DNA of 60,812 bases, taken from the NCBI GenBank assembly GCA_003693705.1, contig RBZT01000971.1, forward strand, positions 1-60,812, in the 5' to 3' direction. The position numbers were made by a program, and so were the translations under genes. Source of the stretch: Polymyxa betae A26-41 (taxonomy: Eukaryota; Protista; Endomyxa: Phytomyxea). The notes beneath the pieces were generated by a model, which did not search any database, had not been told where the DNA came from, and saw only the letters and a list, made by a program, of their open reading frames with translations. Each line of letters opens with the position of its first letter. Positions within the stretch are counted from its first letter, which is position 1. Of this stretch, positions 29,150-59,776 are shown piece by piece.

Positions 29150-32100
29150 TTACAAATCATCAGTATCTAGACGTCGTCGTGTAATCAATGCTTCAGCCAT
29201 AGAACCTGTATTCTGATTCAAGCTACGACTAACATGGTCGATATTTTGATTAAGTTGAACAGGACCAATCTCACTTGGATTATCATCACGATCATCATGA
29301 TCAAGTAGATCCTCATTACCAGTATTCGAATGAGCAACAACTTGATTATATAATGGATTCACTGATTGTCTCTCTAATGCCATATCTACAGCTCCTTTAC
29401 CAGATGATTTCTTCGATATTCGTGCATCAGCAGGAGAAATTTCTACAGGTTTCTCCACGTATACGGGTTCAGGTGCTGATTTCTGTCTTCGTCTTGGACA
29501 GAACGTCTTACGTAGGAAGAGAGCAGCTTGAGCGAAGAAGAAGGTGATGAGAGCAATAGTGAAGAATATGAGAATGAGAGATATAACCCAGTTCATAGTT
29601 GCATCAATCTGTTCAAGTATAAAGAATACTTGAGCTGCCATCATATACATTAATATTGACGTCTGTACTAATAGATGTAATCTATCATCTCCTTTACGTT
29701 GATAAGGATTTAATAATAAGATCAACATCGTATAAATACATGTCACTGACATTCCTATTGGAATCTGATAATTTCGGAATCGAGATCCAAAGAATGATAA
29801 GAGTGATGTTAGAAAGAGCTTGTGGAGATTATCAAGAAGATCGAACCACCAATAACTGGGTGAAAATGCATCATATAAGAATCCAACCTGAGCTTTAATA
29901 CCAGGTTCATGTAATCTATGACGTACTCGATATATAGACCATATAAAGAATAATGGTACACCAATAGGATATATGAATATTAATATTGGACTGTAATTAC
30001 GATATTCATACCATGTAGAAGTATAACATTGAGTACGAACATCAGATAGAAGGTAATCAACACCATCAACTTGTACACAATTATATAGACGTAATATGAT
30101 AGATGATGTCCCAGGATAGAATAAGAACAATAAGAAGAGGATCATACGCCAATATCGACGTCGTGTACGTTTATGTGCAGCTGGTGTAGATGTTCGGCAA
30201 TAACGTCTTGGTAATAGATAAATGAATGTGACAGCTAGAATCAATATAATAGGAGTGATAGATGCACTAATATATGTGGAATAGAAATTAGTAGAGAATA
30301 TACAGGATACCATTGTAATTCCAGCTAGATCAAAGTTTAATGGTGTGAACCATGATAGAAATAATTTATATTGTGGTGGCCATGGCACATCTAATGTACT
30401 TGATAGATTAGTTGTTATTTGAAAGAATCCTAATAATATCTTCATCTTGAACATAAAGTTAGGTGGTAATGATGTTATAACCTGCTGCTGTCCATTCAGA
30501 TGTCTATGTTGTGATATATTCAATAATGTTCTTGATGGTATATGAGTAGTAGGCATTGTTAGACTAGGCTGACTAACATGTCCAGATCCAGTCTGATATT
30601 GAGTCTTCTCTTTCTCCATTCTCATCAATTCAGAACCAGCACGTACTACTAGGAACAGCTGTAATGCAACACATCCACATACTAATGATGTTAAACATAT
30701 AAATGATAACAATGACAAGATTCGAGCTGGGCATTGTGTGCATGAACTTCCCCAAGTGTCGTAATATCCAGATTTACAGACAGCACAGAGCGGGCCGGTA
30801 CGTCGATCTGGACATTCCCCTTCTAATGTCTGCATTGATGGACAATGTGATGCGAATAGACATCGATAGAATTGTCCAGATGCAGATCTCCAATATCCAT
30901 CTAATGCATATAGAGTAGCATTAGTTGTACCATAATGTGTACAATCAGCACCAAATGGACACTGAAGACATGATTGTTCAGGAGGTGAACCAATCTCATG
31001 ATAATATCCTGGATTACATTGACATGATTGTTTGGATGAATCTGGACTAGATGTTGGACTACATGCAAGACAGACAGGAGTACCAAGTTTAGGAGCTATT
31101 AGATGTGGACCACAGACACTGCAATCAGCAGATCCATTAACAGCTGATGTCCCAATTGGACATAATGAACATGATGTAGCACCAGTTGAAGATTTACTTC
31201 CAGCTGGACATAGAAGACATTCATGAGAATTTGGACTGGGTTGATATGAGCCAGCATGACATATATAACATAATGTAGCTGCTGATGTATCAGAATATGA
31301 TCCAGATGGACATATAGAACATTGAGTAGATCCTTGAGTATTGCTATAAGATCCAGGTTCACATTTGTCACATGATTCCGATGCAGTAGTATTAGAGTAT
31401 CGCCCTTGTGGACATGATAGACATATTGTAGATCCAGCTTCTCCTGCATATGCACCAGCTGGACAATCTGTACACTCACTACTGCCTTGCTTATTACTAA
31501 TAGTACCAGCAGGACATAACTGACATGATCCATCTGATGATTTATATCGTCCCATATCACATGGTACACAATTATCACTACCAATACGTAATGTACTATG
31601 TCCAGCATCACATACTGAACATGAACTTGATCCAGATCGATTGGAATATTGACCAATAGGACATGATATACACTGATCTGAACCTGCAGATGAATATGTT
31701 CCAATACCACAATCTGTACATTCTGACATGCCAGAATTTTTAGCAAATCTACCAGCAGGACACGACATACATTGTCCTTGTCCAAGCTGATTCTGATATG
31801 AACCTGATCGACAATCTAGACATTGCTCTACAGCAGATCCATTCCCATAACGACCAGGCACACAATCAAAACATTGAATAGCACCTTGTTGTGGTTGATA
31901 TTGACCACGAGGACATGCATCACATTTCGAGCTAGATTCAGCTGATTGAAAACGTCCAACAGGACACAAAAGACAGTCTGTAGACCCCTATAACACATAA
32001 TCAATATGAGTGATGAGTGCAACTACAGACTACATACTGGATTAGGTGAATATCTGCCTGATGGACAGACAGTACAATCACTACTTCCATTATTGGTTTG

Positions 32101-35100
32101 ATATGTGCCAGCAGGACATAATTCACATGATGTAATACCCAGATTATTAGTAGCTATAGATCGAGATCCTGCTGGACACAGATCACAGACAGTCTTGCCT
32201 GATAGAGCAGCATATCTGCCAGATTGGCAATGTATACATGATGTTAATGCTGGAGCATCACCATATGATCCAATAGGACATGGAATACATTGTGATAATG
32301 CATTCTCATCTGAATATGTTCCAGTAGGACATTGTTGACATGGTCTGGATGATCCAGTCTCATCTTGATATGTTCCAGGTCCACATTCCTTACACAGAAT
32401 AGATCCAGGTTGATCTGCATATGATCCAGCCAAACAATCAATACATTGCGATTGTCCTTCATTGGATTGAGATTGTCCAGGTGAGCACGCCAAACTCTGA
32501 TTCTGTCCAATATCGGACACATAACGACCCGGCTCTGCGAATTTACATTCTTTAGCGCCATAATCATCAGTATATCTACCAATAGGACATGGTGTACATT
32601 GACCTGCACCAGATCCTGAATATGTCCCAGGTGGACATCGTATGCATGAATCTGATGAGTTCGTATATGGCTGATACTGTCCTGCATCACATACTATACA
32701 GTTAGTCTGACCTTGATCTGGTTGATATGTACCAATAGGACAAGGTATCTGATATGTACTGCCTATATATATACATTATATAGTACTCATAATACACACT
32801 CACATACATACCACTATCAACTACATAATATCCTGCATCTGATATCACACATGTATCAGCAGAATCACCATCACCTCGATATGTCCCAGGACTGCATTTC
32901 CGACATGAACTGCTCTCATTAGTACTAGTATAATATCCACCAGGACATGGACTACAGGAAGTAGCTCCAGGTCCACTGTAATATCCAGCCGTACAGATCC
33001 CAGAGCATGCTACCGATCCATTCTGATTCGTAAAACGTCCAGCTGGACACAGAGTGCATGATAATTGTGCAGTTACTGATGTAAATGTACCAGCAGGACA
33101 TAATGAACATATACTCTGTCCAGATATGTTCTGGTACTGGCCCGCTGGACAATCCTGACATGTAGATTGAGCAGTCAAGGCCGTATAACGACCTGGTTCA
33201 CATTCTGAGCAGGTGAACTGTTCAATGCCATTACTATATCGGCCTATAGGACATGATATGCATTGTGTTTGTCCACTTTGATCTTGATATGTTCCAAGTC
33301 CACATTGTGTGCATGATAAACTACTATTACTAGATGCATATCGACCTAATGGACATTTTACACATGATATTTGACCTTCCACAGCCGAATATGACCTATA
33401 CAGACCAAGTCAGATATAAACCCTGAAACCCTTCATTCTGTAATTGATACCCTGGATGACAGATATCACATGATGTGGATCCACCACCTGCCGTACTAGT
33501 CCCTGGTAGACATGCTGTGCACTTAGCCTGTCCTGATGTTGATGAATACGTTCCAGGGTCACATGATAGACAATAACTTTGTCCACTTAAGTTCTGATAT
33601 TGACCAGCAGTACATGAAGAACATGAAGTAGATCCAGGATTAAGTGATGCTGTCCCACGTGGACAATCCAGACATTGAGTAGAACCATCCGAGGTACTAT
33701 ATGTACCAGCTGGGCATGTCTTACATAATATCTGTCCTAAGGTCTCTGAGGCTGTCCCTGGCTTACACAGACTACAAGAAGTGCCACCAGGACGATCTTG
33801 ATAACTTTCATATTATGTCAGATATGATAATAATGTACACATAGAGATACCTTCCAGCAGGACACAGGTCACATGTTCGTTGTCCAGTAGATGATGAATA
33901 TCTTCCAGCAGGACATGATGATATGCATGATGAACTACCTGGATCTGGAGCATATTGTCCAATAGGACATGGTTTACATTGAGAAGATTGAACTTGATCT
34001 GCATATGCTCCTGCTGGACATTGAACACATGATGATGAACCAGTTATATTCTGGTAGGTTCCAATTGGACATTGTAGACATTGAGACTGACCCCAAGATG
34101 GACTATCACATGGTTATTAACTTGATTAAAACGTCAAATCAAACCAGCCAGTCCGATAATTTCCAAATAAAAGTTCATTTAAAACGGTTGCATGAATTTG
34201 GACATACCTGTATGTACCAATAGGACATAGACTACAGGTTGATGATCCAGCTATACCACTGATAGATCTACTATATGTTCCAGGTCCACATTTCATACAT
34301 TGACTAAGTCCAGTCTGGTTACCGAACCATCCAGATGCACACTGATCACATCTAAGTTGACCAGACCCAGCCTGTGCTGTCCCTAATGAGCATGATGTAC
34401 ATGATGTCTGCCTAGTGAATGGTTGAACTGTCCCGGCTAAACAAGACGTGCATAATGTTGATCCAGATGTTGAGGTCTGAGATCCAGCAGAACAATCTGT
34501 ACATGATATAGAGCCTAACACAACTGATTAAATAACATGATAATGACGATAGAATGATAATACCTGATAACTGAGCATATGTACCAGCTGAGCATAAATT
34601 ACATGCAGATGTCTTCTTAGTATCACTATTAGCAGATCCTGGTGCACACTTCTTACACGATGTCTGGCCTAATTGGTCACTATATTCGCCCTCTATACAT
34701 GCACTGCATGATGATTGCCGTGTCTGACTATTATAGAATCCAACTGGACATGGTGTACATGCAATAGCACCAGAGATAGCATAAGTCCCAACTTGACAGT
34801 CAGAACATGATGTAGCTGCAGTCTGATTACTTGCAGTACCATCAGGACATGGTGTACATGATATAGATCCAGATGATGAGGAAAATGTACCAGAAGGACA
34901 TGGACGACATGCAACCTGTCGTACTACATCTTGATATCCAGCAGGACATGATATATATGATAAGAACAAAGGTGATGAACTAATCTGACCACCACCTTGC
35001 ATTACTGATACAGGTATAGATAGACCAGATGTTTGTGGTATAGAACATGTTAACTTTCTATTTGGTATAATAGAATCATGAACTACATTATTACAGGTAT

Positions 35101-38100
35101 CTTCACCAATAAATACAATCGCATTCGATGGACCGAAATCAGATCCTGTAATAGTGATAGTAGGCTGAGAAGTACGAGAGCATGCGACTATGTGTGTGGA
35201 ATCTGATCCAGTTGTACATCCCTTAATTGTCGATAATGTTGGAGCTCGATATGATACCAGATTGACACTTCGTGAGTAGAGCTCTCCAGTAATGACAATA
35301 ACAGGCAGATTAACACCAACTCCAGCTGATAATAAACAGACAAGTGAGAATGGTGGCGAGATACTTATGACATCACATGAGCTTGGTCCAATAATAACGG
35401 ACGTTGAGTTTGATGTGAAATAGTTTCCCTGAATAGTAATGGGTATGGAACCTTCTGTTGGACATTTCGTGGTCGTGTTTTGATGATCAACGCAATATGA
35501 TGATGATGCCGAATGAACGAGAGCGGAGATTGGAAATGCGAATGTATCAGTACCGGTAACAGATGTTTGACCAGCAACGACAACAACGAAATGCCAATCA
35601 GTACCATCACCTTTGCCAACAAGACAAGATAGACGATCTGAACCTATAATCTGTACAGAGGTACATGCAATAGTATTAGTACTGGATCTAGATGTGAGAT
35701 AGACAGTCAGCTTGTCTGCCCAGGTCCCGAGATTATCAACAGAGAAATCAACATATTGATTAACTGATTTAATAGCAGTTAGGAATGATTGAGGAGTATC
35801 AGTTGGGAAAGATCTAAGACCAGAACGTATAACAGGAGCTAGATACGATATTGTAGAGATACTTGGTGATGATTGTAGTGTAAATCCAGGCATTTGTCTA
35901 TGAACTATTACAGATAGGTTAGCTCCAATACCAGTTGATATTGCACATATAATAGATGTATCTGTAGCAGATGTAATATTACAGGAATATGTTGATAAAG
36001 ACTGACTAGGTCCATATTCAACAATATTATTGGATATTGTTGAACTATCAAATCCAGTTCCGGTTATAGTCAGCTTAGTATTACCATTAGTTACAGGTAA
36101 TGCTGAGCATTGCTCAGGTGAACATGTCAATGATGTAATCTGTGGACCAGCATATGATACCAATCCAGATCCAGTACCAGACTGTCCAGAAACAGTAACG
36201 ATCACATCCAGATTAGTAAACGTTGGATCACTCCATGATGATAACGTGCAGATTAGCTGTGTGTGCGATGGCTGTGATACGGGCGTACAGGACCGCGACC
36301 CGATCGTGGCTGTGGCACCGGATACCCCGAAATTATTGCCATTGATTGTGAAGGTATTTGGTGTAGATAATGGACATTGATTAACAGTATGACCAGATAT
36401 TGAGCATGTTGAACTGGATATTGATGTAACAGTTGGTGGACTATATGAGAATAATAATCTGTTAGTACTGGATTGAGATGCAACACTAACAGCTACTGGT
36501 AATGCATGACCAGATCCAGCACCAACACGACATGTCAGGGTCGTACCGCCCGACACGCTCAATACTGGGCAGTTTCCATTACCGACATTAGCTGAGATCT
36601 GGCTTACATCTGTTCCGAAATTGCTACCGATTATGGTGAGCAAATAGGAGCCGGAAGTGAGGGTCGATGGTGTTGATAATGATGTCAATGTTGGACGATC
36701 ATATGAGAATGCTGAATTGAATATGTAGGTGGGATTATTACTAACAGTGATAGCAATGGGAAGATTGGCTCCAATCCCAGCTGGTATCGTGCATGTAATA
36801 GATGAATCCGAATATGAGCTATATGATGAGCATTCAGTGTTGTTAATGAGGACTTTACCATCAGATCCAAATGATGTTCCAGATAATGAAATAAAGTCAC
36901 CACCTGTACTACCACCATGTAATGGCCATATTGAATTAATAACTGGTGCATTGTATGAGAATAGTGCAGATGATGATCTGGCTGATTGTTGACCATCGAC
37001 AGTGACACGAACATACAGGCCCTTACCCATACCTGGTTGTAATGAACATGTAATCTGAGTATGAGCTGTTATTAATTGTGGTGATAAACATGAATATGAG
37101 ACTGAATCGTTCTCAATGACAACAGATCTAGATACAGCAGCATTGCCTAATGATGTTCCCGTAACTGTAAGTACAACATCAGCAGCTGATGTATCAGCAG
37201 TTAATGGTGTAATGGAAGTAATATTTGGTGGATTATAAGCAATATGTAATTGATTAGTACTTGATTGTTGAGCTATTGATACAGATACTGATTGACTAGA
37301 TCCAGATCCTTCACCAGCATTACATAATATCATAGTATTATTAACATATACTGCAGAAGAACATGATACACCACCTATACGAACACTAACAGAACCAGAG
37401 ATGCCTGATCCGAAATCAGTTCCAACAATAGTAACGCGTGCACCAGATGTTGGTAATGATATTGGAATAGTTCTAATTAATGTTGGGGCAGTATATTGTA
37501 ACGTAAGGGAGTTACTTGTAACACCAGATACTGATACTGTAGTTAATGCAGTTTGTCCTTGACCATTAGGTGATGTGCATATAATAATAGATTGATTATG
37601 TGAGGAGATCTCACATGAACATCTTAATAATTGAGTACCAGTTGTATCAGCACATTGACTTCCCATATTAACAGATATAATACTATCACTTGTGCCAAAG
37701 TCATGACCAATCAAGGTGACAGTCTCTGAGCCTCCTGTTGATAATGATGTCTTTCCAGTTGGCAGGATAGCTCGAGTCAGTGTTGGTCCTCGATATTGGT
37801 AATAATATCCTGAACTTGTTCGTGTATCAACAGTTACATACAGCATAAATGATCCACCAGGTCCAGATGGTATCTGACATGATAGTTTCGTATGATTTAC
37901 CAATGTCTGTACAGATGTACAATCAACATTATCTGATACACGCTTGATTGTCTTCGGCACTGATTTCGTTCCGAAATTCGATCCGGTGATGGTGACGATC
38001 GTTGTGCCATTGGTGCGGGCCCCAGTGGTAGAATCCAATGCAGAAACAGTAGGTGTGATTGCTGATATAACAGGAGCATCATATAAGAATGTGATGGCAT

Positions 38101-41036
38101 CAGTACTTGATTGTCCATCAGCATTAATAATAACAGAATGATCAGTATTAATCTTAGCAGGTAATGTACATATAATTTGACTTGATATAACAGAAGTTAC
38201 TGTACATATAGATCCACCAACATAAACTGTTAATCCTTTGATAGAAGATCCAAAATTAAATCCAATAATAGTGATAGAATCACCACCTAAAGGCAATGAG
38301 TATTGACAAACCCTAAACCCTGGACATTTACCTGTTGTTCTAGCTACAGCTCCAATTACACTAGATACAGTTGGTATATGATAGCTAATAAATGATGATG
38401 CAGATCTTGCATCATTAGTGAATACACTAACTGGAATATTAGCACCACGTCCATTTGGTGATTTACAGGTAATTGATGTATGTGACCATGATACAATTGT
38501 ACATAATTGATCACCAATATTTGGGATTTTAAATGTCACATTACCACCAGATGGACCAAAATTCTGTCCTGAAATCTGTATCACATCATTCGAGCTGGTT
38601 GTAATTAAAGATGGCAGAACACTGCTGATCGAGGGAGGATTATAGGAGAACCTCGCCGTTTGAACTGGAACCTGACCAGATACGTTCACAATGATGGGCA
38701 GATTGATGCCAGTTCCCGACGGTGTCTGAATAAAAATTTTAGAGAACTGTAAAGTGAAATGACAAACAAATCTGAAAGAGAGTATAGTTTCAAAACCAGT
38801 ATTGTGCAAATAAAAACTGGAAAGTTAACAACATTGAAGTCAGGTTGAAATAACGAGATTGCAAAACGATGTTTAGATATGGCTTACAATGCATGCTAGC
38901 TTGGTATCAGTATGATCAATGATAGTCTCTTTAACAATGCAGGGATTGCCATTAATGTTGATAGTAGCAGATGCAGATATAGTGCCAAGATTAGTACCTG
39001 TAATAATAACAGAATCACCACCAGATGTAGATCCAGTATATACAGTAGATGTATCAATAACAGGTGCTGTATATGAGAATATTGATGATATTGTAGTATT
39101 AGCAACTGATGTACCAATAATAACATCAAGATTAGCACCAACACCATTAGGTATTGTACAGTATATTAATGTATGATTCCATAATGATATAGAGCATGTT
39201 CTACCACCAATCCATACAGATCCTGACACAGATCCAAAACTATTTCCAATGACAGTAAATGTAGAACCACCAGCCGTTGGTACAGCTGATGTTGGCTTTA
39301 AACTAGTAATAGATGCATTCTGATATGAATATGAATATGAATTACTAGGACCACTTCTATGTGATAATATAACAGTACGTTTACCAGATCCAGATGTCAT
39401 CTGAAATGTAGCTGTTGTTGCTGTACTAGTTAGAACTGTATAATATGTTCCATCAACAGATAATAATGGATTTGTACCAAAACTTGTTCCTTGTATAGTG
39501 ACAATCTGATTACCAGATGTTGATATAATTGGTGATATTGATGTAATTGTTGGTGCTGCATAATTATACACAATTGATGTTGGAGCATTGTTTTGTCCAG
39601 CAACAGATATTGCAATCACATTCGACTAACCAAAACGATTGAATATGGGATGGATGGATAATGAATGGCAAACTTACAAGTCCTTCTCCAGGAGGTATTC
39701 TTACTTGCATCATTGTATGATTACGTGAACATGTAGAACATGATAATACTGCTGATGAACCAATAGTGACAGTAATAGAAGCATTACTTGTACCAAAGTT
39801 GAGTCCATAGATAGTAAGCCATGTTGATGATGATGATGTAGATCCTGATGTTGGACCAATAGATGATGATAATGATATAATCTCTGGTGCATCATATGAT
39901 AATGTATAAACAGTATATGATTGATCTAATACTTGAACTATCACATCCTTATTAGTACCTTGTCCAGATGGTAATACACATAGTAATTGAGTGTGTAAGG
40001 TATTACTGGATGTTATTGGACATGATAAACCACCAACTTTTACTGATCTTGATATTAGTTGATTACCAAGATTTGTACCAGTTATTGTGAGTGTATCTCC
40101 ACCAGATGTTCGCGCAGGTGATGCTGATAATGAGCTGATTGTTGGTGGATTATATGCAAAATATACAGCTGTATTTACACCAGTTGTATCATGTGCAGAT
40201 ACAGATATTGTATTATGTGATCCAGCACCTGCACCCATTGAACATATTATCTGTGTATGGGTTTGAGATACCAATGTACAATTATAACTAAAATTGATTT
40301 TAGCAGGGTTTTAGGGTTTGTAAACCTCTCACAAACCTTCCAACTTTGACTACAGCTGTACCAATGGGACCGAAATGATTCCCATTGATAGTAAGTTGTG
40401 TAGGTAGACCAGTTGATACAATTGGACCAGTTGGTCCTGATGTTGGTGATATTGATGTAATAGTAGGTGTTGCATATGATAATGTCCAATTTCCAGCTAC
40501 ATAATACTTATTAGTGACCATAATGTAACGACTTGATGGATTCGATGGATAATTCGATGTTGTTAAAGCTGGGAATGTACATATTAATTTCGTCATTGTA
40601 ATTGTTGAACATGTCACTGATTGACCATAGACTCTGAAGGAGAAATCTGCATCAGAATTATCAAAGAAATTATTTCCTATAATGGTGACAGGAGTAGCTC
40701 CAGCTGTTGGTGGATTAGCTGGTGATACACTTGATATTGCTGGAACTATTCATATGTTGAGTATTAAGTATACAGGTAATGTATTATCATACCAAGACAT
40801 GTAGATATGATATCACTACAACAATCTTGATATTGCATACAGACATCATCACACCAGCATGATAACGAGTTATTAGTTGCCATTGTACTGCACATGACAG
40901 TTTTAGCATCATTATTAGCTGCCTGGCAATATGGCCGTGGTGGGTTAAATGCTGGATACCATGAGGGAATTTTACATTCCGTTCGTGGCAAGGTAATGGC
41001 TATTATGATGGCGATGTAGAGCCACCATGGCCACAT
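29150..41036 (-). CDS. Giant receptor-like protein A (~3,700 aa, about 12 exons): signal peptide, somatomedin-B-like domain, ~20 IPT/TIG repeats, dozens of Cys-rich GCC2/GCC3 (Ephrin_rec_like/TNFR-like) units, multi-TM C-terminal domain
   Basis: MWPWWLYIAIIIAITLP; CWCDDVCMQYQDCCSD (SMB); repeated PxITSISP..G.T.GG..ITI.G.NFG...I.C..P.G.G; repeated C..CPAG.YS...G...C; TM region KILLGFFQI...PWP...LFLLFLFYP...IYPIGVP...GFLYDAF...WWFDLLD...PYQRKGDDRLH. Last exon ~29150-31977. Confidence 0.9.
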
Positions 41037-41157
41037 TAGTTGTCGTACTTTGACGACAACAATATAACGATTATTATGTAGTCAGTGAATGACAGCAAAC
41101 ATCATGCTGCAAGTGATACAACCTCAGATAATAGATCGTTTTCATTGAAATGAACGA

Positions 41158-41211: not shown

Positions 41212-42643
41212 TAATTGGCAGCCTTCTTATTATCATTACAACCTGCCTGCTTCTTCGGTACAGCCGGCTGCTTTTTAGCTACTTGCTTTTTCGGTACAAC
41301 CGCCTGCTTTTTAGCTGCCTGTTTTTGGATGCAGCCGCCCTAAGATTTATGATTGCTATTAGCAAACAGTAGCCGTTGAAACCAAATCGAAAGAAAATGT
41401 CTGGAAATGAAATTCGTACATGATATGAAACAATACGAATACACTCACTTTGCTGCTTTCTTTACAGCACAAGCCGTAACAACACCTTGCTTATTCATAG
41501 TAACTTGGAATGGACTTGCTTGTTTCAATAAACCAACACAATTAAGTCCATCAGCTCCATAAGATGCCTCAAATCGTCCACACAAGAATGTGAAGAGATT
41601 GGTACCAACTTCTGGATCTGGAGAGGTCGCCTTTGAGGTCAAACCCATTCCAGCAGCATAACGAACAGGTGCAACTTTACGAAAGTTCTGACAATATGTT
41701 GTTGATGTTCCAGCTGCACCTCGTTGTTGATTAACACCAATTCGATAAAGATCACGTTTAATAGCATTGGCCTTTCCATTGACCAATGTCATAGGATCAT
41801 TCTCAGGGACAATTGCAATGGGTGCCTGTTGTAATTTAGCAGCTATGATTTCATTAAGAGCCAGAGCCGAGAGAGTAGAGCCAGGATCAGATAAATCTGG
41901 GGCCTGGAATCGATTACATTTAAGAGTTTGCAAAACGGTCATTAGAAGGGCGTTATCACTTCCATTAGAGATGACCTGAGCTCCAGCAAGTCTCTTACGA
42001 TTGGCAGCTGTGTTCTGAGCGAGCTGCTTGTTTTTAGTGACCAGATATGTGGTATCAACATTGTCACTCTGATCCATATCTACAAGACCAAAATCTCGTG
42101 TTGTTAAGCATGCCATACCATCAGCACCTTTACCCAGAGCTGGGACATTGACAGCGTTGGCTGCTGCTGCGAAGAACGCTGGAGCATTGCAGTACGCGAA
42201 CTGGCCGAAGATCGATTTCCCCACACCATTAACACATTTCCCAGCAGCAACACCAGCACCAGTTAATTGCAAAGTATCACCGTTTGTACCGAACCAGATA
42301 CCGACCACAGCATTAGTAGGTAATTTCGGGACAACGGGAGCAACAGCTGGTTGGGTACCAGCATTAATAACCAATGGAGGATAAATCGAAAGCTGCTTTG
42401 TGGCCGGGTCGAAGATTACAGCTTCAACAAATGAAGGATTATCACCAGCTTGATCACATCCTCTCATCTAAAACAGAATCAATATTGAGATATGAGGACA
42501 TGAATAACAGAAAGATTTACAGTATAAGGAGTGGCCAATCCCTGAGCAGATAATGGATTTGCAGGCACAGTTAGGACACATTGTCCTTGGACTTTAATGC
42601 TTAAGAGCAGCAGAACAACTACTGAAAACATTCCCAGCTGCAT
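41212..42643 (-). CDS. Secreted protein of an uncharacterised family (recalled from fungi and actinobacteria), with a probable third exon encoding a Lys/Ala-rich tail
   Basis: Exon 1 42521-42643 (signal MQLGMFSVVVLLLLSIKVQG, CVLTVPANPLSAQGLATPY); intron 42468-42520; exon 2 with VVGIWFG.NG, FGQFAYCNAPAFF, VDMDQSDNV, NGSDN. The ORF 'stop' at 41445 sits inside a GTGAGT donor; acceptor at ~41340. 3' end uncertain. Confidence 0.8.
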
Positions 42644-50100: not shown

Positions 50101-53100
50101 GTTTACAAGGAAAACAGCTGGTGTCTCCAATATTCGGCTGTTCATAACCAACTGGGCATTGAATACAGCTTGTGGAATTATACGACGATGTATACGTTCC
50201 AGCAGGACAGGGCGTACACGACGAAGATTCTGGCGTTGGCGCATATGTACCAGGAGGACACAATGTACATTGAGTTGGATTCAATGTTTGCCCATTTTGG
50301 TAACTAAAGAGAACAATCAAATTTAGAGTTCGTTCAACAAACTAAATTCAGTCTTGACCTTCCAGCAGGACAGACATCACAAACAGTCGAGTTAGAGGAA
50401 TTGGAAAACCGTCCAGCAGGACACTTTACACAGGACTTTGAGCCATAATCTGAACTGAACGTGCCTGGAGTGCATAGATCACACGATGTTTGCCCAACGA
50501 GATTCTGAGCAGAATTTCAGCAAAAGATACAAAGAAAACTGTCAACCTCCTACTTGAGATGATCCTGGAGGACAACTTTCACATTGAGAGCCAGATGGTG
50601 AGTTTTGATTTCGAAATGTTCCTGCGGGACACTGGCTGCATAGAACCGTGCCTTCAGATCCAGCAAACCTATAAGATGATAAGAAAAAATCTATAAACGG
50701 ACTCGTGAAATGCTGACCTTCCATCAGCACAAGGAGAACACTGTCGAGAGCGTTCTGATGGTGCTGCATATCCCAAAGGACACAAATCACATTCGCTCTG
50801 AGCCGACAATGGCTGGGCTCTGCCAACAGGACAGCTAATGCAGACTGGAGAGCCTTCACCAGCAAACGTCCCAGGTAAACAATCGATACATTGTGTTGGG
50901 CCATTCGAAGTTCTTCCAGCAGGGCAGGCAAAGCATTCTTTTAGACCCGTGATATTACTGAGCAAAGTCACACATTGTATTCCCAAGGTGCAGAGTTCAT
51001 ATGAAATACCTGAACCGCCCCAGAGAGCAGGTCGAACAAGATGCCTGACCACTATTTGAATTGAATGTTCCAACTGGGCACCGTAAACAGGATTGTTGTT
51101 CGGTTTGCGACTGGGAAAAACTCAGTGAAAGTACAGCGGAGTGAATGTCAACATTACAGTATACGTTCCTGCAGGGCAAGCGATACAATTGTCCAATCCG
51201 GGACTATTTGCATAAGTTCCTGGGTCGCATGGTTTACATGTTGTACTGCCTGGATTATTGGCATGCCTAAAGAGGAGTTATTTACCGAACATTTTTTTGA
51301 CCCATATGAAATCATACTTTCCAGAAGAGCATAGTGAACACGCAGCCACACCACCGGTCAGAGAAAAGGTTCCTGCACGACATGATGCACATGATGATTG
51401 ACCAGTAAGGTTATTATAAGTTCCAGGTGGACAGAGAGAACATTGGCTTGATCCATACGCCGACTGAACATCAAATTAGAATCGAAGTCGAAGTTGAATT
51501 AATTGGTAACTCACAGAGAAGGTAGCGATTGGACAGTCTAGACATTTTCCAGAACCAACCTGACTTTGATATTTCCCAGGAGGACATGCCAAGCATTGTG
51601 GTGTGCCTTGAACTGGCGCGTACATTCCTTGGTTGCAATCAGTACATGTTGACAATCCAGATGCCCCATTCAATGATGATCGTCCGACAGAACAGTTCTT
51701 GCAGGACGCAGCATTGAACGTATCCGACTAAAATCCGGTCAATTTGTGACTACAAAATTAGGACCACTTACATATGTTCCAGCTGGACAGTTATCACAAG
51801 ACGATAGCCCAATAGATGACGAATACCTGCCAGGAGTGCAGGAGGAACAAGCGATAGATCCCGTTTCTGTGGCGGAAGTTCCAGCACCACATGGTATACA
51901 AGCTGATTGCCCTTGATTAGGCTGCTTATAACCTGAGGGACAGGCCAGGCACTGATTCTTAAACGTCAGAGAGGCATTATTGAATCTACTCACACTCAGG
52001 CAACCAGACCCTAGACCCTAGACCCCTTCAAACCTTCCAGCGGGACATAGTGTGCAGACTGACGAACCAACTGTTGTTGCCATTGTACCATCTGGACAAT
52101 TGATGCAGAAGGTTTTCTTCTCAGAGGACTGATAGGTTCCTTGTGGGCATGAAGTGCATTCTGAACCTGAAATCGCATACCTGCCTGTAGGGCAGTTTGT
52201 GCAACTAACAGCCCCTGTCTGAGATGATTCAGTACCATCTGGACATTTCGAGCAAATGCTCTCTATAACAAAACATCAGATGCTAAAACAGCAAATGTAA
52301 TTCAATTACGCCCAGGTACTGAATATGTATTTCTAGGACATGGTTGGCAGGATGTAGCAGCAGTTTCATTTGAATACGTCCCAGCTGGACAGCTTAAGCA
52401 TTGATCATTACCAGATGCAGGCGAATATGTTCCAGGTTGGCAAGCAACACATGAGTTCAATGTCGCGCTATTCGTATAACCCTACATAACATTCAGTGAA
52501 ATGCATTAAGGATCGGATATAAGCAGTACCGGAGGGCATTTCGTACAGGATAAGGATTGTGTCGAATTCGAGTATGTTCCTGCAACACAGGCAGGGCATT
52601 GAGCTTGACCAATGTTGGGATTCGCTGTTCCTGTAGCACAGTCTGTACACGAGACAGCAGCATTGGATGAAGAATATCGTCCGGCTGCGCAGGTCGTGCA
52701 ATTTGTCGATTGAAAGGTAGATGTGTAGCTAACAATGCGTTAATGATACGACATTTGAAAAAGACAAAAAGAACCTTCCACTAGGACATTGAGCACACGA
52801 CGACAGCCCAGCCGAGGCAGTATAATAGCCAGGTGTACAGGGTGAACACGATGTGCTGCCTGAGACTTGCGACTGAAAGCCAGCAGGACATGATAAACAT
52901 GATGAGCTCCCAGTAGTACTGCTATACCTATAGCAAAGGATTCAGAAAACATCAGACCGATACAAGCCTGTTAACAAACCTTCCCGGTACACAGGACTTG
53001 CAGGATGCCGCCCCGACAGCATCAGTAAATGTTCCTGCTGGACATGGAGTACAGAAGGAGGCTCCGGCACGAGAAAAGGTCCCAGTTGGACAGGTCTGGC

Positions 53101-56100
53101 ACGAGATCGACCCAGTTACGTTCGAGAATTGTCCATCAGGGCATTGATTGCAGACTGATTGGCCCAGACCTGACTGACTGGTTCCCACCGGGCATTGCTT
53201 ACAGGATGTCTGTCCAGAGATGTCTTGGTATGATCCAGCAGGGCAATCGATCGAGGAATTCGATCCCACAGCGATGCTGTATCGTCCAGGTGGCGCTTGC
53301 GTACATGTGACCGATTTGGGCGTGGCCGAATACGATCCGGCGTCACATGCGATGCAAGACGAAACCGTGTCAGACGAGATTGTCCCGGATGGACAGTTTA
53401 GACACTTGGTCATGGCCATCTTGTTCGCATAAGTTCCCAAATTACATTTTTCACAGGATGTGACACCGGTCGCTGACGAGAATCGACCCAATTCGCAATC
53501 AACACATAATGTACTGTTGTATCCATGACGTCCTTGCGGGCAGCTGCTGCACAATGACGATCCGGAGTTTGGTGCAATCGTTCCCGCCAGGCAAGTGCTG
53601 CAAACAGCAGCGTTCGAGCCAGCCGATGCAGTGCCAGGCGGACACTTCAGGCAAGTATTGCCAGAGACGTACAGACCCGGATTGCACGGTGCATATGAAA
53701 TCGTGACATTCGATGAAGTTCCAACGGTTCCTCCATTCTGAATGACAAGCAGAGTACGTTGCATTCCTGATCCGGCCGGAGTCGTACATGCGAACTTACG
53801 CTGCGGCAGCGTATTATCATGAATTACGCTTGTACATGGCAGACCTCCAACATACACTGTCACTGGACTTCGAAAGTTCTGCCCAGTAACAGTGATAAGA
53901 TCGCCACCGGAACGAGAGCAATTTTTAATGGATCCGGGTGATGAATTATCAGTCAGACATCCAGCAACGCTGCTGATAATCGGCGGCGCATATGAAAATA
54001 GTCGAACGCCCCGAGAAAACAGAAGGCCTGATGAAGCCACCACCTGCAATGACAATCCAGCACCCTCAGAAACTTGGCAAGTATATTTGAAAGATGAGAT
54101 GAACGTGTTTAGCAGGCATGTACTAGTTGAAATTCGTGTACTGACATCACTGGCGAAGTTGGCGCCTGTAACAGTCAGGATAGCGCCACCTTCGGTCGAA
54201 CAGCCAGATGTAGCATTACCGCTCTATTGACATAATAATTATTTAGCCCGAAATAATAAGTACAGAAAATAGTACCTGAGATGGACATCCTTCGACTTTG
54301 TAAATAACTGGAGCAATTGGATATGAATAAGCGAAAGGACTAACAGCAGACGCCACATTTAAGGCTGTGAGAATGAATCTGAGATTGGAACCTTCACCAG
54401 GGACAGTACGGCACGTAATCTGTGCTGTCTCCCTCGATGCATCAATTACAGTGACACTAATCGATTGACAAGAATATTGGTTATAATTTGGTCCGGGTCC
54501 ATACGTCACTTTTAGAGCATCGGCTCGACTACCGACATGCTGAGCCTGGAATGTGATCGTCTGACCTTCGGTAGTATTAACTTGCAACAGATTCGATCGA
54601 ATAGATGAACCGGTGGTTCCCAAAGACGAATCGACCAGAGCCGGTGTAGGATGATTCAATGTATCGGATCCGAATAGCGATTGCTGTTTACCAGACATTA
54701 TCTGAAATTGAAGCCCAGAGCCAACACTATCAGATAAAGCGCATGATATCGCATAGATTCCGTTCGTGAGAGACACTTGCTGAACATCGGAACAACCGAA
54801 CTGGAAAGATGATGATGGTAGACCATAGATGACCGACCAAGGAGTAGAAACCAGATTTGTACAGCTGAAATAAGCACGAAGCCCTTGACTTCCAACCAAT
54901 GTCCAGTTAGCAGTAACAGCTCCTATAGGTCCATATGTTGTACTGCTAGTCTTAACTTGCAATGTCCCTGATATGATGACAGGACCAGCATATGACAGAT
55001 AATTCTTGCTGTCAGTTTGAGCCTGCAACTGATTCGGCCCAACCGATACAGCGACAGGTAAAGAGAATCCACCAACATCTCGAGCTGGTAACGAACATGT
55101 CATTATCTGACCTGGATTGTTGTACAGGTAGGTGACATTCGAGCAAAAAAGGCCTCCAACTGTAATGTTGGATTTTGCTGCGAAATTATTGCCGGAAACT
55201 GTAATCGTTGTCCCGCCCAAGATGCTGCAGCTTGAAGTTGTCGTGACATCGTTAACAGTGCATCCGCGAACAGAATTAATATGGGGTGCAGCATACGAGA
55301 ACGATTTGGGTGAGCTGCTTTGGCCACCAACTGTCATAATTACAGACAGCGATGCTCCTGAATTTTTAGGAAGAAGACACACAATATTGGTGTGGTTATG
55401 CTGTCCTGAGACTACTGGACAGAATGCATTTCCAACCAGAATCGTTGCAGTATCCGAACTGGAACCGAAATTTGTTCCCTTGATTGTTAAAACATTTGAC
55501 GTTATGGATTCGGTAAATGCCAATGGCGCATATAAAGTCGAGATCACAGGTGCTGCATACGAGAATATTTGGCTTCCACCAGAGCCAGCCTCCCCTGCGT
55601 TATTATACACAATAACATCAAGAAATTTCCCAACACCGGCTGGGATTGAACATTCGATGGATGTCTGCTGAAACCCGGCCCCAGTAACATTACAGAGTTT
55701 ACCACCAACTAATATACGAGCAGAACCAGAATATGGGCCGAATTCGGTTCCTGACAAAAAAAGGCTAATACCTCCAGCCGTGCTTGCTACTCCTACAAAG
55801 AACGATGTCAAATATAGAAAGAACGCGAGATAGAACATTTACTTGGACTGAGCGATGTAAGAACAGGTTTTCTGTAGCTCATAACGGTCTGAGCTGTCTG
55901 TCCGCCTGCTTTTAATATCAAGGTGAGATTTGTGCCTGAATTCTTTGGGGCTGTGCACCGAACTCGAGTGTGTGATTGTGTTCCGGCAACGATATCGCAA
56001 GATTTCTCTCCGAATGTAATAACCGACGAGGTTCCAAACGAGGTTCCAGATATAATTAACACCCCAGATCCATCAGTTGGTACTAAACCATCAGCTGAAT

Positions 56101-59100
56101 TCAATACAGAAACGGAGCTGATTTCTGGAGGTGCATAGGAGAAATTCTTCGCCGCAGACGTCTGCCCTTCAACATTAACAATCAAGGCGAGATTAACCCC
56201 CTGACCAGACGGGACCGAACATGTGATTTGAGCGCCGTTCAGTACCAGCTGTATTGCAGCGCACAGCTTTCCACCAATCGTTGCAAAACCAGTTGTACCA
56301 AAATTGTTTCCGAAAACAGTAATGACATCCCCTCCAGCAGTGGAGAACGACGATGTTAAACCCGAATAAGATGAGATCACAGGCTGGTCGTATGATAATG
56401 TAAGGGAATTACTCTTCTGGGCGCCAATTGAGATTTGCACACTAACACCAGTACCTTGTCCAGATGGTAATGAACAAATGACCAAAGTATTGTTCTGAAA
56501 TATACTCGAACAGACACTTCCACCAACTGTTGCAGTTCCATAGGAACCTAGATTGTTACCAACGATTGTGATGGGAACACCACCCAATGTTGGATATGAC
56601 GATGCCGAAATAGCCGTGATGGTTGGGCCGAAATACGAAATAAGCACAGATTGGGTTGAGACCAGACCATCGACATTGACAGTGACCAATTGGCCGGTAC
56701 CGAGTCCGCTTGGAACTGTACAGTTAATCTGTGTCTGGATATGTCCAGTAACAGGGCAGTCGTACTGGCCGCCGATCGTCACCGAGACCGTCGCCGACGA
56801 GGGTCCAAAATTCGATCCCGAAATCATCATCAGAGTGTTGCCCGATGTTGAGAACAGAGTCGGCGATACGTTATTGACAATCGGGGCCTGATAAGTGAGT
56901 TGAGCCGAACCAGAATACTGGCCCCCGACTACAGCATAAACTTGAATGCCCTTGCCTGACCCTGCCGGACACTTGAATGTAAATCTTCTATGTGGTATCA
57001 CCCTGGTAATTTGTATAACAGTTGATAAAATGACAACATAGGCTGGAGATGAGTTCGGGCCGAAATTCGTTCCATCGACGGTGATGGTGACAGTTCCGAG
57101 AGTATCACAGCCAGACGTTGGCGTCAGTGTTGTAATCGATGGAGCGTAGAAGTTGACGGCGCTGGAAACCGTCGCAGAAACCGACGGCGTCGAAGATGTT
57201 CGCGTCACCGTAAAATTCAAATTAGCACCGGTTGAATTGGCCGGCATACACTTGATTAGATTATGAGTATATGAGCGGGTAGAGCAGCTTAAGCCTGCGA
57301 CAGTAGCCTGCCCGCTCGTTCCAAAGCTACTTCCGGTAATGGTTAATAATGGACTTTGTGAGGTATCGGTTGAGAAGAATGTCGGAGTGGCTGCCATTGA
57401 ATTGGGCGCATTGAACGTCAGCAACGACGAATATCCAACTTTTCCATCGGCCGATCGAACTTGGAGTGTGCTATTTGCACCTGATAATGCAGGCATAGTG
57501 CACATAATGACAGTATGACTCCAGCCACCACTCTTTCACAATGGTTAAAGTGAATTAAACAAACAAACTAAACAGTGTGTCGCACCTGAATAGGACATGA
57601 CGCTCCCGAGCTGACGAACGTAACAGTTCCTGTCGAGGAACCGAAACTCGATCCGAATATCGTCAGAATGACACCGCCTTCGGTATTAATCGATGCCGGA
57701 TTGACACTTGTAATGGTTGGGCTGCGAAATGAGAAATATCCAGATAATGTACTGGATCTGCCTCCAGCAGGGACTTTCACCCGAACATCAAGATTTGATC
57801 CCGAACTAGGTGATACCAAACATTGAACAGTTGTGTGTGAGAACACGCTTGTTGCACATGAAATCAGATCAATTTCAGCGAGACCAGTCGTGCCCAGGTT
57901 CGTCCCGATAAACTGAACATTACTTCCTTCTGTTGCCGAATGAGCTGGGACAACACTGCTCAGAACTGGAGGGTCGTAAGCGAATATCTTATCGACATTG
58001 GATAAACGGCCGAGAACGCTAACAAAGACTTGCAGATCGTTGCCTTGACCAGGAGGAACAGTACACGTGATACGGGTATGATTATTAGTGGGACCTAAAC
58101 TAGAAACGCATTCCGTTCCCGTTCCTGTGTCGCTTGAATGACGAAAATAAACCTTTCCAGATGTGCCGAAATTCGATCCAGACAAGATAATCGCATAGCC
58201 TCCTTGTGTCGACCCCGAACTCGGGCTGATGGACGTCAAGGTCGGCGGCAGATAATTGACGTAAACGGCTGTATTGGAGTTAACCAGAGTGCCAACCTGA
58301 ACTGTCGGAAAGAGCCCGGTCCCTTGACCAGCAGCTGCCAGACAGGTCAACACCGTATGAGCAGTTGTAATTACAACATTGCTGCAGGCAACTGTCCCAA
58401 GCGTTATCGTGACGGCACCAGAATTAACAGGACCAAAGTTGGTGCCAGTTAAGGTAATAATGCCTCCTGTTGTTGGTAGTGCAGAGCCCGAAGATGGATA
58501 GGTAATTGCTGATACAGTTGGGGCATTGTAATTGTAGTAGATTGATGACTGTGAAACCTGAGTATTGACAGTAATTGTCACCAATACATTGGCACCATAG
58601 CCTGTAGATATTCAGAATTCATATCTGCATACATGAGCATTTAGGCTGTACCTGCAGGGACCGTACATTTGACGGAAGTATGATTTGTGACAAATGATGG
58701 TGATGCACAACTCCAGGTTCCAGCAAACATCACAGATACCTTGGAGATTGCATTTCCAAAATTGGTTCCGGTGACAGTGATGATCCCGCCCCCATTCGTA
58801 GATCCAGATGACAACCATACCGATGAGATCGCAGGAGTCACATAATTGAACGATGCACTGGCCGATTGCCCTCCAGCCGTGACCGTGACAATCGAATTTG
58901 TGCCCGTTCCAACTGGACATGGAACAATAATAGATGTGAATGACTTCGATGTGATAGCTGTAGTGATCCCGTTAACTGTTACGGACGGATTTGTGCCAAA
59001 ATTCGCTCCATAAATGGTGATGGGAATGGAGCCATCTGTCTTCATCACAGATGGGCTTAACGATGTGATGGTTGGCGGCGCGAAAGAGCACGAAATCGAA

Positions 59101-59776
59101 ACCGTGTCGGTTTTTCGCATCGTATTCCATAGTACGAGATTGACAGCTGAACCTCCAGATTGAGCAGGAACAGTCAATACAAAACTTTCTGATAAGCCCA
59201 AACTGTATTTGGGTGTCAATGGTGTTTGTGTAAACGGGTCGTACTTATTCCAGTTAGGCCAGTAATTCTTCGTACTCGATACCACAGTCATGTTATTACC
59301 TCCAAGTTGAAACATTGGACTGTAAGTGTTCGCAAACGTATTATCCCATAAAGTAAAGTATCGACCGCTGATGGTTATCGTATCCGTTCCATCATTGAGT
59401 AACCCACTGGATTTACTAATGCTAAACAATATAAACATTAGTATGAAGCCATGAATCAGCAAGGAAATACGAACGTGAGCAAAGTCGGCTTCATGCAATC
59501 TTGATAAAAACTCGAATGACAATCCCCAAAAATCTGACATTGCAGACCACATGCGTATGCATCCCATCGATTGATTGCACAATTATTCCAGGAGAAAGTC
59601 TTTCCATTAGTTGTTCCAGATGATTGTGTAGTACAATACGATGCAGGGCCAAAATTTTCACATAGTGAGGCGCAAGTTCCAGCTTCAGCTAGATGATTGA
59701 AACTAATCAGTATAATTACTGCAACTAATAATGATAATGGCCTTCCATTCGTAACAAATGCACGAATGCTTGCCAT
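47169..59776 (-). CDS. Giant receptor-like protein B, paralog of A (~3,600 aa, roughly 30 exons): signal peptide, Cys-rich SMB-like domain, IPT/TIG repeats, Cys-rich repeats, multi-TM domain
   Basis: ATG at 59776 with hydrophobic LSLLVAVIILISF; CGLQCQIFGDC; IPT repeats at 53.7-59.1 kb; CPAG repeats at 49.2-53.7 kb. TM motifs shared with A: GPLCAIC, KLKIMLG, FWRML, FLIYP, LYPIGIP, PYIRKGDDRLHL. Confidence 0.9.

What the first reader, a model, noticed from the sequence alone, without database searches (positions are those of the whole stretch)
29150..59776. Candidate undescribed surface-sensing or recognition locus: two giant paralogous IPT/Cys-rich/multi-TM receptors flanking a secreted protein and a pseudokinase-HECT ligase
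Seen: four co-oriented genes in the order receptor B, NZF-pseudokinase-HECT, secreted protein, receptor A. A and B have collinear architecture and conserved TM motifs (GPLCAxC, WRM, YPIGxP, PYxRKGDDRLHL) but very divergent ectodomains. Established: paired IPT/TIG-repeat proteins TgrB1/TgrC1 mediate allorecognition in Dictyostelium, and NZF and HECT domains read and write ubiquitin downstream of receptors. Inference: a receptor pair with a ubiquitin signalling module, possibly for self/non-self recognition, cell fusion or host-surface sensing. Linkage alone does not prove shared function.
Basis: partly seen in the sequence, partly recalled or inferred. Interest (0 to 1): 0.82.

Follow-up and report, generated by a model that had tools for sequence, protein, structure and literature searches.

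The report
Paired giant CRMP-like surface receptors
Two very large, anciently duplicated surface-receptor genes of a root parasite (almost surely Polymyxa betae) lie 6 kb apart and belong to a widespread, little-studied family related to the CRMP host-contact sensors of malaria-type parasites. The ubiquitin-ligase gene and the secreted-protein gene between them look like neighbours by chance, not partners.

Summary
Four co-oriented minus-strand genes occupy 29150-59776:
- receptor B (59776-47169);
- an NZF/kinase-like/HECT gene (46757-42799);
- a secreted-protein gene (42643-41445);
- receptor A (41036-29150).

A and B are collinear: signal peptide, small Cys module, 16-18 IPT/TIG units, a long Ephrin_rec_like stalk, a DUF7630 module and about 10 TM helices. 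All the named motifs occur in both, in the same order.

- **Family size:** the TM core is not an orphan. It has 7,465 representative relatives, many of them 3,000-6,500-aa TIG + Ephrin_rec_like giants.
- **Known relatives:** it is distantly tied to Pfam PF06011. By eye, its motifs match the CRMP core sequences printed in a Toxoplasma paper, where CRMPA and CRMPB form a heterodimer.
- **Age of the pair:** A and B each have their own ortholog (B's is in Plasmodiophora brassicae), so this is an old tandem duplication.
- **Linkage:** it is not conserved. The B ortholog's contig has a GAF-kinase gene downstream. The P. brassicae homologues of the secreted gene sit in other contexts. None of 10 relatives' loci has a HECT neighbour.
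- **Expression:** only the HECT gene was seen, as spliced RNA.
- **Not tested:** co-expression and polymorphism.
- **Earlier scan notes:** first-stage notes covered parts of this same window. The one word search of the scan's earlier notes returned nothing.

The parts
47169..59776 (-). Receptor B gene, many small introns. The ATG is at 59776 and the stop codon at 47169-47171.
   Evidence: ORFs and Pfam; ATG and stop. Analysed exon by exon; the exons were not joined.
53690..59582 (-). B ectodomain: 16 IPT/TIG stretches.
   Evidence: PF01833 hits on five ORFs.
49242..53689 (-). B stalk of Ephrin_rec_like (GCC2_GCC3) Cys repeats.
   Evidence: PF07699 hits on many exons.
47172..49128 (-). B DUF7630 juxtamembrane module and multi-TM core, split over at least 5 exons.
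   Evidence: DUF7630 E 1.4e-4 and TRP E 9e-5; motifs; family-profile hits.
42799..46757 (-). NZF-NZF / helical / kinase-like / HECT gene.
   Evidence: Reading-frame segments; Pfam. Spliced contigs at 95-99% identity in run X1 show GT..AG introns at 43100-43151, 43355-43402, 43494-43538, 43672-43719 and 44230-44276, and one near 46409-46462.
46572..46757 (-). Two C4 RanBP2/NZF-type zinc fingers. Finger 1 reads C-x2-C-T-F...C-Q-M-C; finger 2 reads W-x-C-x2-C-T-Y...C-G-A-C.
   Evidence: PF00641 E 4e-5, 23 bits, below the 27-bit cut-off; the patterns were read from the translation.
44504..44728 (-). Exon with the kinase-like catalytic loop: HGNLHARN (Asn where the catalytic Asp sits) and DFS in place of DFG.
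   Evidence: Weak hits to Pkinase 9e-4, APH 7e-4, Kdo 4e-4 and TCAD9 8e-5.
42799..44229 (-). HECT domain, with the catalytic Cys in the motif TCFHTLDMP.
   Evidence: PF00632 positions 7-98, 178-243 and 240-286 of 306 on three exons.
41445..42643 (-). Secreted-protein gene. Exon 1 (42643-42521) carries the signal peptide, the intron is 42520-42468, and exon 2 is 42467-41448.
   Evidence: Homologues: P. brassicae 63% and 57% identity, chytrids and Ktedonobacteria 50-57%, no Pfam family. Model pLDDT 91 with no PDB match.
29150..41036 (-). Receptor A gene. The last 2.8 kb form one intron-free exon.
40767..41036 (-). A signal peptide and Somatomedin_B module.
   Evidence: PF01033, 23.4 bits against a cut-off of 23.1.
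34922..40749 (-). A ectodomain: 18 IPT/TIG stretches.
30824..34921 (-). A stalk of Ephrin_rec_like Cys repeats.
29480..30823 (-). A DUF7630 module and core of about 10 TM helices.
   Evidence: AlphaFold2 model pLDDT 87, pTM 0.85. 7,465 relatives.
29348..29359 (-). NPLY motif in A's cytosolic tail.
   Evidence: NPL[YF]-like motifs recur in the tails of homologues in alignment A1.

Best explanation
A and B are old tandem duplicates of one gene. It belongs to a large eukaryotic family of giant multi-pass surface receptors.

**Architecture.** Each protein has a variable adhesive head, here a small Cys module plus 16-18 IPT/TIG units. Next comes a rigid Ephrin_rec_like Cys-repeat stalk, then a DUF7630 juxtamembrane module (GPLCxxC...CxxC). 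The core of about 10 TM helices is distantly tied to Pfam PF06011 (fungal Pkd2/Flc 'TRP-like' proteins). By motif it also resembles the CRMP core of apicomplexans, chromerids and Dictyostelium.

**Most likely function (inferred).** They sit in the plasma membrane of the parasite, almost surely Polymyxa betae, with the TIG/Cys region outside and the tail in the cytosol. They bind an external surface or matrix and pass the signal through the TM core. They may well act as an A/B heterodimer, as CRMPA and CRMPB do.

**The genes in between.** The NZF/kinase-like/HECT ligase gene and the secreted-protein gene are most likely unrelated neighbours in a compact genome.

**Shown:** architecture, family size, age of the duplication, lack of conserved linkage.
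**Inferred:** topology, sensing role, heterodimer.
For: **Architecture and family**
- Architecture and collinearity.
- The TM core has 7,465 representative relatives (318 at E <= 1e-30). Many are 3,000-6,500 aa with the core at the C-terminus.
- The three giants scanned, and all 29 word-search hits by their precomputed Pfam lists, carry TIG; all but one also carry Ephrin_rec_like.
- 33 of 48 relatives' cores hit PF06011, best E 2.5e-12.
- ESM Atlas shape matches (TM-score 0.62-0.77) go to uncharacterised eukaryotic clusters with Ephrin_rec_like, DUF7630, LRR or TIR.

**CRMP resemblance**
- CRMP core sequences in supplementary file 6 of PMC9815656 show the same landmarks in the same order. These are GPLCxxC..GY..CxxC before TM1, C..V...Y.L......CYT, IGxP, GFL..Y....WW/FW[ED] and QPF/NPY.[RK]..D[DN]RL. 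They are clearest in Dictyostelium Q86I19 (read by eye).
- CRMPA and CRMPB are two paralogues that form a heterodimer through their TM domains.

**Age of the pair**
- B exons group with P0013 (SH-aLRT 99) and A with P0001 (100).
- A tree with all of these held together is not rejected and has the higher likelihood (p-AU 0.78).
- Deeply diverged adjacent pairs also occur elsewhere: L004 at 31% identity and gene models g34203/g34204 at 30%.

**No conserved linkage:**

**Organism:** the assembly figures match the P. betae genome paper (1,001 contigs; 27,085,946 against 27,085,814 bp).
Against: - CRMP homology was judged by eye from printed sequences, not by a statistical test. The word search found no protein named CRMP.
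- A and B score below the PF06011 cut-off (16.8-24.4 bits against 28.5).
- The TM model has no solved structural relative (Foldseek best E 0.08; VIA-align best Z 7.2). The fold therefore gives no function.
- Neither the heterodimer nor the localisation was tested.
- The four genes are tightly packed, with gaps of 411, 155 and 408 nt, and co-oriented. Lineage-specific co-regulation is therefore not excluded.
- The P. brassicae check of B's flank covers only about 4 kb downstream. A-B linkage there is unknown.
Confidence: 0.6

Rival explanations
1. The four genes form one functional module: a receptor pair whose signal is read and written by the adjacent NZF/kinase-like/HECT ligase, with the secreted protein as ligand or co-factor.
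For: - Co-orientation and very short gaps of 411, 155 and 408 nt.
- The ligase has a complete HECT domain with its Cys, and finger 1 carries the T-F...M signature known from ubiquitin-binding NZF fingers.
- The HECT gene is transcribed and spliced in a close relative.
- The 231-aa helical region of the ligase is single-copy in the genome.
Against: - Linkage is not conserved. L003 has a GAF-kinase gene after the B ortholog and no similarity to the HECT gene.
- The P. brassicae homologues of the secreted gene lie in unrelated contexts.
- None of 10 relatives' loci has a HECT neighbour.
- The secreted gene is one of three copies; the other two are on other contigs.
- No WW domain or other receptor-docking domain was found in the ligase.
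- Short gaps are expected in a 27-Mb genome.
Confidence: 0.12
2. A and B act separately as adhesion-gated or stretch-gated cation channels, like fission-yeast Pkd2 and the Flc proteins (PF06011). They would not be a heterodimeric sensor. Their adjacency is only the trace of a tandem duplication.
For: - The PF06011 link holds for two thirds of the relatives.
- Atlas clusters named 'TRP ion channel domain-containing' score 0.96-0.97.
- Pkd2 was reported to become calcium-permeable under membrane stretch (abstract of PMC9727806).
Against: - Both proteins score below the Pfam cut-off.
- The fungal-type N-terminal domain is absent.
- The model shows no TRP or polycystin fold among solved structures.
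- Channel activity of this branch has never been shown.
Confidence: 0.2
3. A Tgr-like self/non-self (allorecognition or fusion) pair, as in Dictyostelium TgrB1/TgrC1.
For: IPT/TIG-rich ectodomains and two linked paralogues.
Against: - Multi-pass rather than single-pass.
- Co-oriented with two genes between them, not divergent from a shared promoter.
- Each paralogue has a conserved ortholog (B: 53-66% to a protein clustered with P. brassicae's; A: 71% to a UniParc protein of unknown source) and the same layout is widespread. This fits a conserved function better than a fast-evolving recognition locus.
- Polymorphism was not measured.
Confidence: 0.05

Closest known systems
CRMPs (cysteine repeat modular proteins) of Apicomplexa, e.g. 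Toxoplasma CRMPA/CRMPB, with homologues in Chromera and Dictyostelium (PMC9815656, PMC9670195)
   Same: - Very large proteins with Ephrin-receptor-like/EGF-like Cys repeats outside, then a multi-TM core (9 TM in CRMPs) and a cytosolic tail.
- Two diverged paralogues per genome.
- Shared landmark motifs around and within the TM core, read by eye.
   Different: - The head here is made of TIG units plus a small Cys module, not Kringle, MAR or lectin domains.
- The strict signature PYxRKGDDRLH is degenerate in CRMPs (QPF.[KN]R...L[ND].LE).
- The organism is a rhizarian plant-root parasite without rhoptries.
- Homology was not tested statistically, and neither the heterodimer nor any exocytosis role was tested.
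Pfam PF06011 'TRP' family (S. pombe Pkd2, S. cerevisiae Flc1-3, Aspergillus TrpR)
   Same: Weak to moderate HMM similarity over the last five or so TM helices. 33 of 48 relatives match.
   Different: - A and B score below the curated cut-off.
- No fungal-type N-terminal domain.
- The ectodomain is about ten times larger.
Polycystin-1/polycystin-2 (my own knowledge)
   Same: The concept: a giant Ig-like-repeat ectodomain fused to a multi-TM core, working with a paralogous partner.
   Different: No detectable fold or sequence relation.
Dictyostelium TgrB1/TgrC1 (my own knowledge)
   Same: IPT/TIG repeats and linked paralogues.
   Different: Tgr proteins are single-pass, divergently transcribed and hyper-polymorphic. 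These are multi-pass, co-oriented and have conserved orthologues.

Membership tests
CRMP superfamily | Ephrin-receptor-like/EGF-like Cys repeats directly upstream of the TM core | tested here: met
   PF07699 hits with E down to 1.8e-43 in A and 4.8e-34 in B.
CRMP superfamily | Conserved core: juxtamembrane Cys module plus a 9-TM domain homologous to CRMPs | tested here: inconclusive
   The motif order matches the core sequences in the paper's supplement, best for Dictyostelium Q86I19 (by eye). No E-value could be computed. The word search returned no protein named CRMP.
CRMP superfamily | Two paralogues that form a heterodimer through their TM domains | not testable with these tools
   Two paralogues are present. 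No multimer prediction or binding assay was available.
PF06011 TRP-like (Pkd2/Flc) | Score above Pfam's gathering cut-off of 28.5 bits | tested here: not met
   A scores 16.8-24.4 bits and B 21.9-23.5 bits. 33 of 48 relatives match at E <= 0.01, best 2.5e-12. This points to a related superfamily, not membership.
PF06011 TRP-like (Pkd2/Flc) | Cation-channel activity | not testable with these tools
   The TM model has no solved relative.
TgrB1/TgrC1 allorecognition pair | Single-pass TM protein with IPT/TIG repeats | tested here: not met
   TIG repeats are present, but the model shows about 10 TM helices.
TgrB1/TgrC1 allorecognition pair | High polymorphism of the ectodomains | not tested
HECT E3 ligases | Complete HECT domain with the catalytic Cys | tested here: met
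   PF00632 matches on three exons, each above the 23.9-bit cut-off or supporting it. The Cys lies in TCFHTLDMP.
NZF (Npl4-type) ubiquitin-binding zinc finger | C4 RanBP2-type finger with the T-F...hydrophobic signature | tested here: inconclusive
   PF00641 scores 23 bits against a cut-off of 27. Finger 1 has T-F and M at the expected places; finger 2 has T-Y and A. Binding was not tested.
Protein kinase fold (pseudokinase) | Kinase-domain match with a missing catalytic Asp | tested here: inconclusive
   Only the catalytic-loop exon matches, weakly (Pkinase E 9e-4). The motifs are HGN in place of HRD and DFS in place of DFG.

The most novel reading that the evidence does not exclude
A and B form an obligate CRMP-like heterodimer on the zoospore surface. 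It senses contact with the root-hair wall and triggers the parasite's injection step. Host-contact sensing through CRMP-type receptor pairs would then be shared between apicomplexans and plasmodiophorid plant parasites. The adjacent NZF/kinase-like/HECT ligase could be a lineage-specific regulator of receptor turnover.
Probability: 0.12. Interest if true: 0.8.

Novelty: new member of a known kind. Interest (0 to 1): 0.4.

Why it matters
Plasmodiophorids include the clubroot and powdery-scab agents and the vectors of rhizomania and cereal viruses. No receptor for host contact is known to me in this group; that is my own knowledge, and the one paper search on it found nothing relevant.

This genome has one pair of giant TIG-type receptors, plus one distant relative with a different ectodomain. 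The best-studied look-alikes of the pair, Toxoplasma CRMPA and CRMPB, are essential host-contact sensors. The pair is therefore a short, testable candidate list.

The abstract of the Toxoplasma paper calls CRMPs apicomplexan-specific. The result here shows that the CRMP-like TM core belongs to a very large eukaryotic family. Most of its members are TIG/Ephrin_rec_like giants known only from metagenomes.

The proposed link to ubiquitin signalling should not be carried forward without new evidence.

Tried and rejected
**RNA and reads**
- RNA raw-read runs X6, X10 and X13 held no read of this stretch, so they are no test.
- Co-expression of the four genes and polymorphism of the ectodomains could not be measured.

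**Searches that led nowhere**
- The genome search on a P. brassicae locus is not possible, since the collection holds only bacteria and archaea.
- The word search with a giant relative's TM region found no protein named CRMP.
- The PDB sequence profile search gave nothing for the TM core or the secreted protein.
- Foldseek and VIA-align against the PDB gave only noise for both models.
- Paper searches for this architecture in protists or Plasmodiophora gave nothing useful.

**A conclusion withdrawn**
- A first tree put B in a well-supported clade without A. With more rows this vanished, and the constrained tree was better. I therefore dropped the idea of two ancient pan-eukaryotic A and B clades.

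They were handled exon by exon, by reference. For that reason no full-length relative of the NZF/kinase-like/HECT protein could be sought.

Full report
**1. What is there**

The window is eukaryotic DNA with introns of about 50 nt. All four genes of the finding lie on the minus strand.

| Order of transcription | Gene | Coordinates |
|---|---|---|
| 1 | Receptor B | ATG 59776, stop 47171-47169 |
| 2 | NZF/kinase-like/HECT | ATG 46757, stop 42801-42799 |
| 3 | Secreted protein | ATG 42643, intron 42520-42468, stop 41447-41445 |
| 4 | Receptor A | ATG 41036, stop 29152-29150 |

The gaps between the genes are 411, 155 and 408 nt.

Another note on this window confirms that labelling.

**2. The organism**

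- The genome handle has 27,085,814 bases in 1,001 contigs.
- The Polymyxa betae genome announcement reports 1,001 contigs and 27,085,946 bp (PMC6328671).
- The best named relatives of window proteins are from Plasmodiophora brassicae.
- Other relatives come from the rhizarians Filoreta and Leptophrys.

I take the source to be P. betae, an obligate root endoparasite and virus vector. This is an inference from matching figures, not a label given by a tool.

**3. The receptors**

Receptor A:
- a signal peptide and a Somatomedin_B module;
- 18 TIG stretches;
- a long Ephrin_rec_like stalk;
- a DUF7630 module and a TM core inside one 939-codon exon.

Receptor B:
- a signal peptide and a Cys-rich start;
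- 16 TIG stretches;
- an Ephrin_rec_like stalk spread over many exons;
- DUF7630 and a TM core split over at least five exons.

Comparison of the two:
- tblastn of A on the B region is collinear through the core at 28-39% identity. The ectodomain repeats are 30-35% identical.

B and the ligase gene were analysed exon by exon, by reference.

**4. What the TM core is**

- *Family size.* A full HMMER search of 1.84 billion representatives found 7,465 relatives (2,391 at E <= 1e-10, 318 at E <= 1e-30). Many are 3,000-6,500 aa with the core at the C-terminus.
- *Shared layout.* The three giants scanned carry TIG and Ephrin_rec_like. By their precomputed Pfam lists, all 29 long proteins found with a relative's core carry TIG and all but one carry Ephrin_rec_like. 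Several carry the JGI label 'IPT/TIG domain/Tyrosine-protein kinase ephrin type A/B receptor-like'.
- *Pfam link.* 33 of 48 relatives' cores hit PF06011 (best E 2.5e-12). A and B stay below the cut-off.
- *Structure.* The AlphaFold2 model of A's core is confident (pLDDT 87, pTM 0.85). It has no solved relative: Foldseek best E 0.08 and VIA-align best Z 7.2, which is noise for helical bundles.
- *Predicted look-alikes.* In the ESM Atlas it matches uncharacterised eukaryotic clusters (TM-score 0.62-0.77). These combine the same core with Ephrin_rec_like, DUF7630, LRR or TIR parts and come from cnidarians, haptophytes and giant viruses.

The core is thus a widespread receptor chassis with exchangeable heads. 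It is not an undescribed orphan.

**5. Relation to CRMPs**

Two Toxoplasma papers describe CRMPA and CRMPB as giant proteins with Ephrin-receptor-like/EGF-like repeats and nine TM helices. They form a heterodimer through their TM domains and are needed to trigger rhoptry discharge on host contact. Homologues exist in Chromera and Dictyostelium (PMC9670195, PMC9815656).

In the core sequences printed in supplementary file 6 of PMC9815656 I read the same landmarks in the same order as in A and B:
- GPLCxxC..GY..CxxC just before TM1;
- C..V...Y.L......CYT;
- IGxP;
- GFL..Y....(W/F)W(E/D);
- (N/Q)P(Y/F).(R/K)..D(D/N)RL.

The match is clearest for Dictyostelium Q86I19 and more degenerate in apicomplexans. 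This is a comparison by eye. I could not pass those sequences to a tool, so membership stays 'inconclusive'. I still consider it likely.

**6. Age and copy number**

- *Copies.* A's core finds only A and B in the genome. The family profile adds a distant third member on contig C674, with Chlam_PMP repeats instead of TIG, and a doubtful fourth hit.
- *Orthologues.* P0013 shares a 90% cluster with a P. brassicae protein. It matches B exons at 53-66% identity and A at 34%. P0001 matches A at 71%.
- *Trees.* B exons group with P0013 (SH-aLRT 99) and A with P0001 (100).
- *A result that did not hold.* A first tree placed B in a supported clade without A. It dissolved with more rows. The tree with A, P0001, B and P0013 held together has a higher likelihood and is not rejected (p-AU 0.78).

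The simplest reading is a tandem duplication that is older than the split between the window's organism and P. brassicae. Similar adjacent, deeply diverged pairs occur in other lineages:
- L004, 31% identity, grouping together in the tree;
- gene models g34203 and g34204, 30% identity.

Adjacency is therefore an ordinary trace of how this family grows.

**7. The two genes in between**

*The ligase gene.*
- It encodes two C4 RanBP2/NZF-type fingers. Finger 1 has the T-F...M signature.
- A helical region of about 400 aa without Pfam matches follows.
- One exon gives weak kinase-fold hits and carries HGNLHARN and DFS.
- The HECT domain is complete and has its Cys.
- Contigs of run X1, at 95-99% identity, are spliced at five clear GT..AG introns, and probably at a sixth near 46409-46462. 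The gene is therefore expressed in a close relative.

*The secreted protein.*
- It has 41 + 340 codons, which fits the 381-386-aa P. brassicae homologues (63% and 57% identity).
- It belongs to a large family shared with chytrids and Ktedonobacteria at 50-57% identity, with no Pfam family.
- The genome has three copies.
- Its model is confident (pLDDT 91) and has no PDB match.

**8. Is it a module?**

| Locus checked | Result |
|---|---|
| L003, P. brassicae-like contig | The B ortholog is followed by a GAF-GAF-kinase gene; tblastx finds no trace of the ligase gene |
| L006-L009, four P. brassicae loci of the secreted-protein homologues | No HECT and no TIG receptor within 10 kb |
| L001-L005 and L010-L014, ten relatives' loci | No HECT neighbour; one has adjacent paralogues |

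Limits of this test:
- L003 covers only about 4 kb downstream of the B ortholog.
- Linkage of A and B in P. brassicae is unknown.
- No ortholog of the ligase could be sought, because only unjoined exons could be used and the word search is bound by query length.
- Co-expression and polymorphism were not measured.

On this evidence the ubiquitin-module reading is unsupported, but it is not strictly excluded for this lineage.

**9. Verdict**

- **Observation:** confirmed.
- **Interpretation:** partly supported. A receptor pair, yes. An undescribed kind with a ubiquitin module, no.
- **Best reading (0.6):** an old tandem pair of CRMP-like TIG/Ephrin_rec_like multi-pass surface receptors. They probably sense or bind an external surface and may act as a heterodimer. 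Two unrelated genes lie between them.
- **Novelty:** new member of a known kind.
- **Interest:** moderate (0.4). It gives plasmodiophorid biology a concrete candidate for host-contact sensing and widens the known range of the CRMP-type core.

Noticed in passing
41445-42643 (also G000:C236:7357-8367 and G000:C158:6183-6887): The secreted protein belongs to a large family (2,181 hits among the 8,000 candidates scored). It is shared by plasmodiophorids, chytrid fungi and Ktedonobacteria at 50-63% identity and has no Pfam family. Its AlphaFold2 model is confident (pLDDT 91) and has no PDB match (best Z 4.5). The patchy spread across domains of life suggests gene transfer. P. brassicae has tandem copies.
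   Followed up: partly
29348-29359; tails of homologues in alignment A1: A's cytosolic tail carries NPLY. NPL[YF]-like motifs recur in the tails of several distant homologues and may be an endocytic or adaptor signal. B's tail lacks it.
   Followed up: no
G000:C674:233-1372 (L015): A third, distant member of the DUF7630 + TM-core family sits near the start of its contig. Upstream of the core it has Chlam_PMP repeats (E 2.3e-13) instead of TIG.
   Followed up: partly
L004 (P0029/P0079); gene models g34203/g34204 (P0294/P0288): Other genomes also hold adjacent pairs of giant paralogues of this family that are only 30-31% identical over their full length.
   Followed up: partly
40290-40315: A telomere-like CCCTAAA repeat (TTTAGGG type) lies inside a small intron of receptor A.
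   Followed up: no
43411-43511: One X1 contig skips 99 nt here and has 17 other letters in between. This could be an alternative splice form or a divergent allele of the HECT gene in the related strain. X1 differs from the window at 18 sites in the part it covers.
   Followed up: no
41214-41339: A Lys/Ala-rich open frame lies between the secreted gene and receptor A. The secreted protein does not need it to reach the length of its P. brassicae homologues (381 against 381-386 aa).
   Followed up: partly
25329-27524 (+ strand): Downstream of A lie exons of a DNA/RNA non-specific endonuclease and of a cytochrome P450, on the opposite strand. There is no synteny with the P. brassicae-like contig L003.
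   Followed up: no
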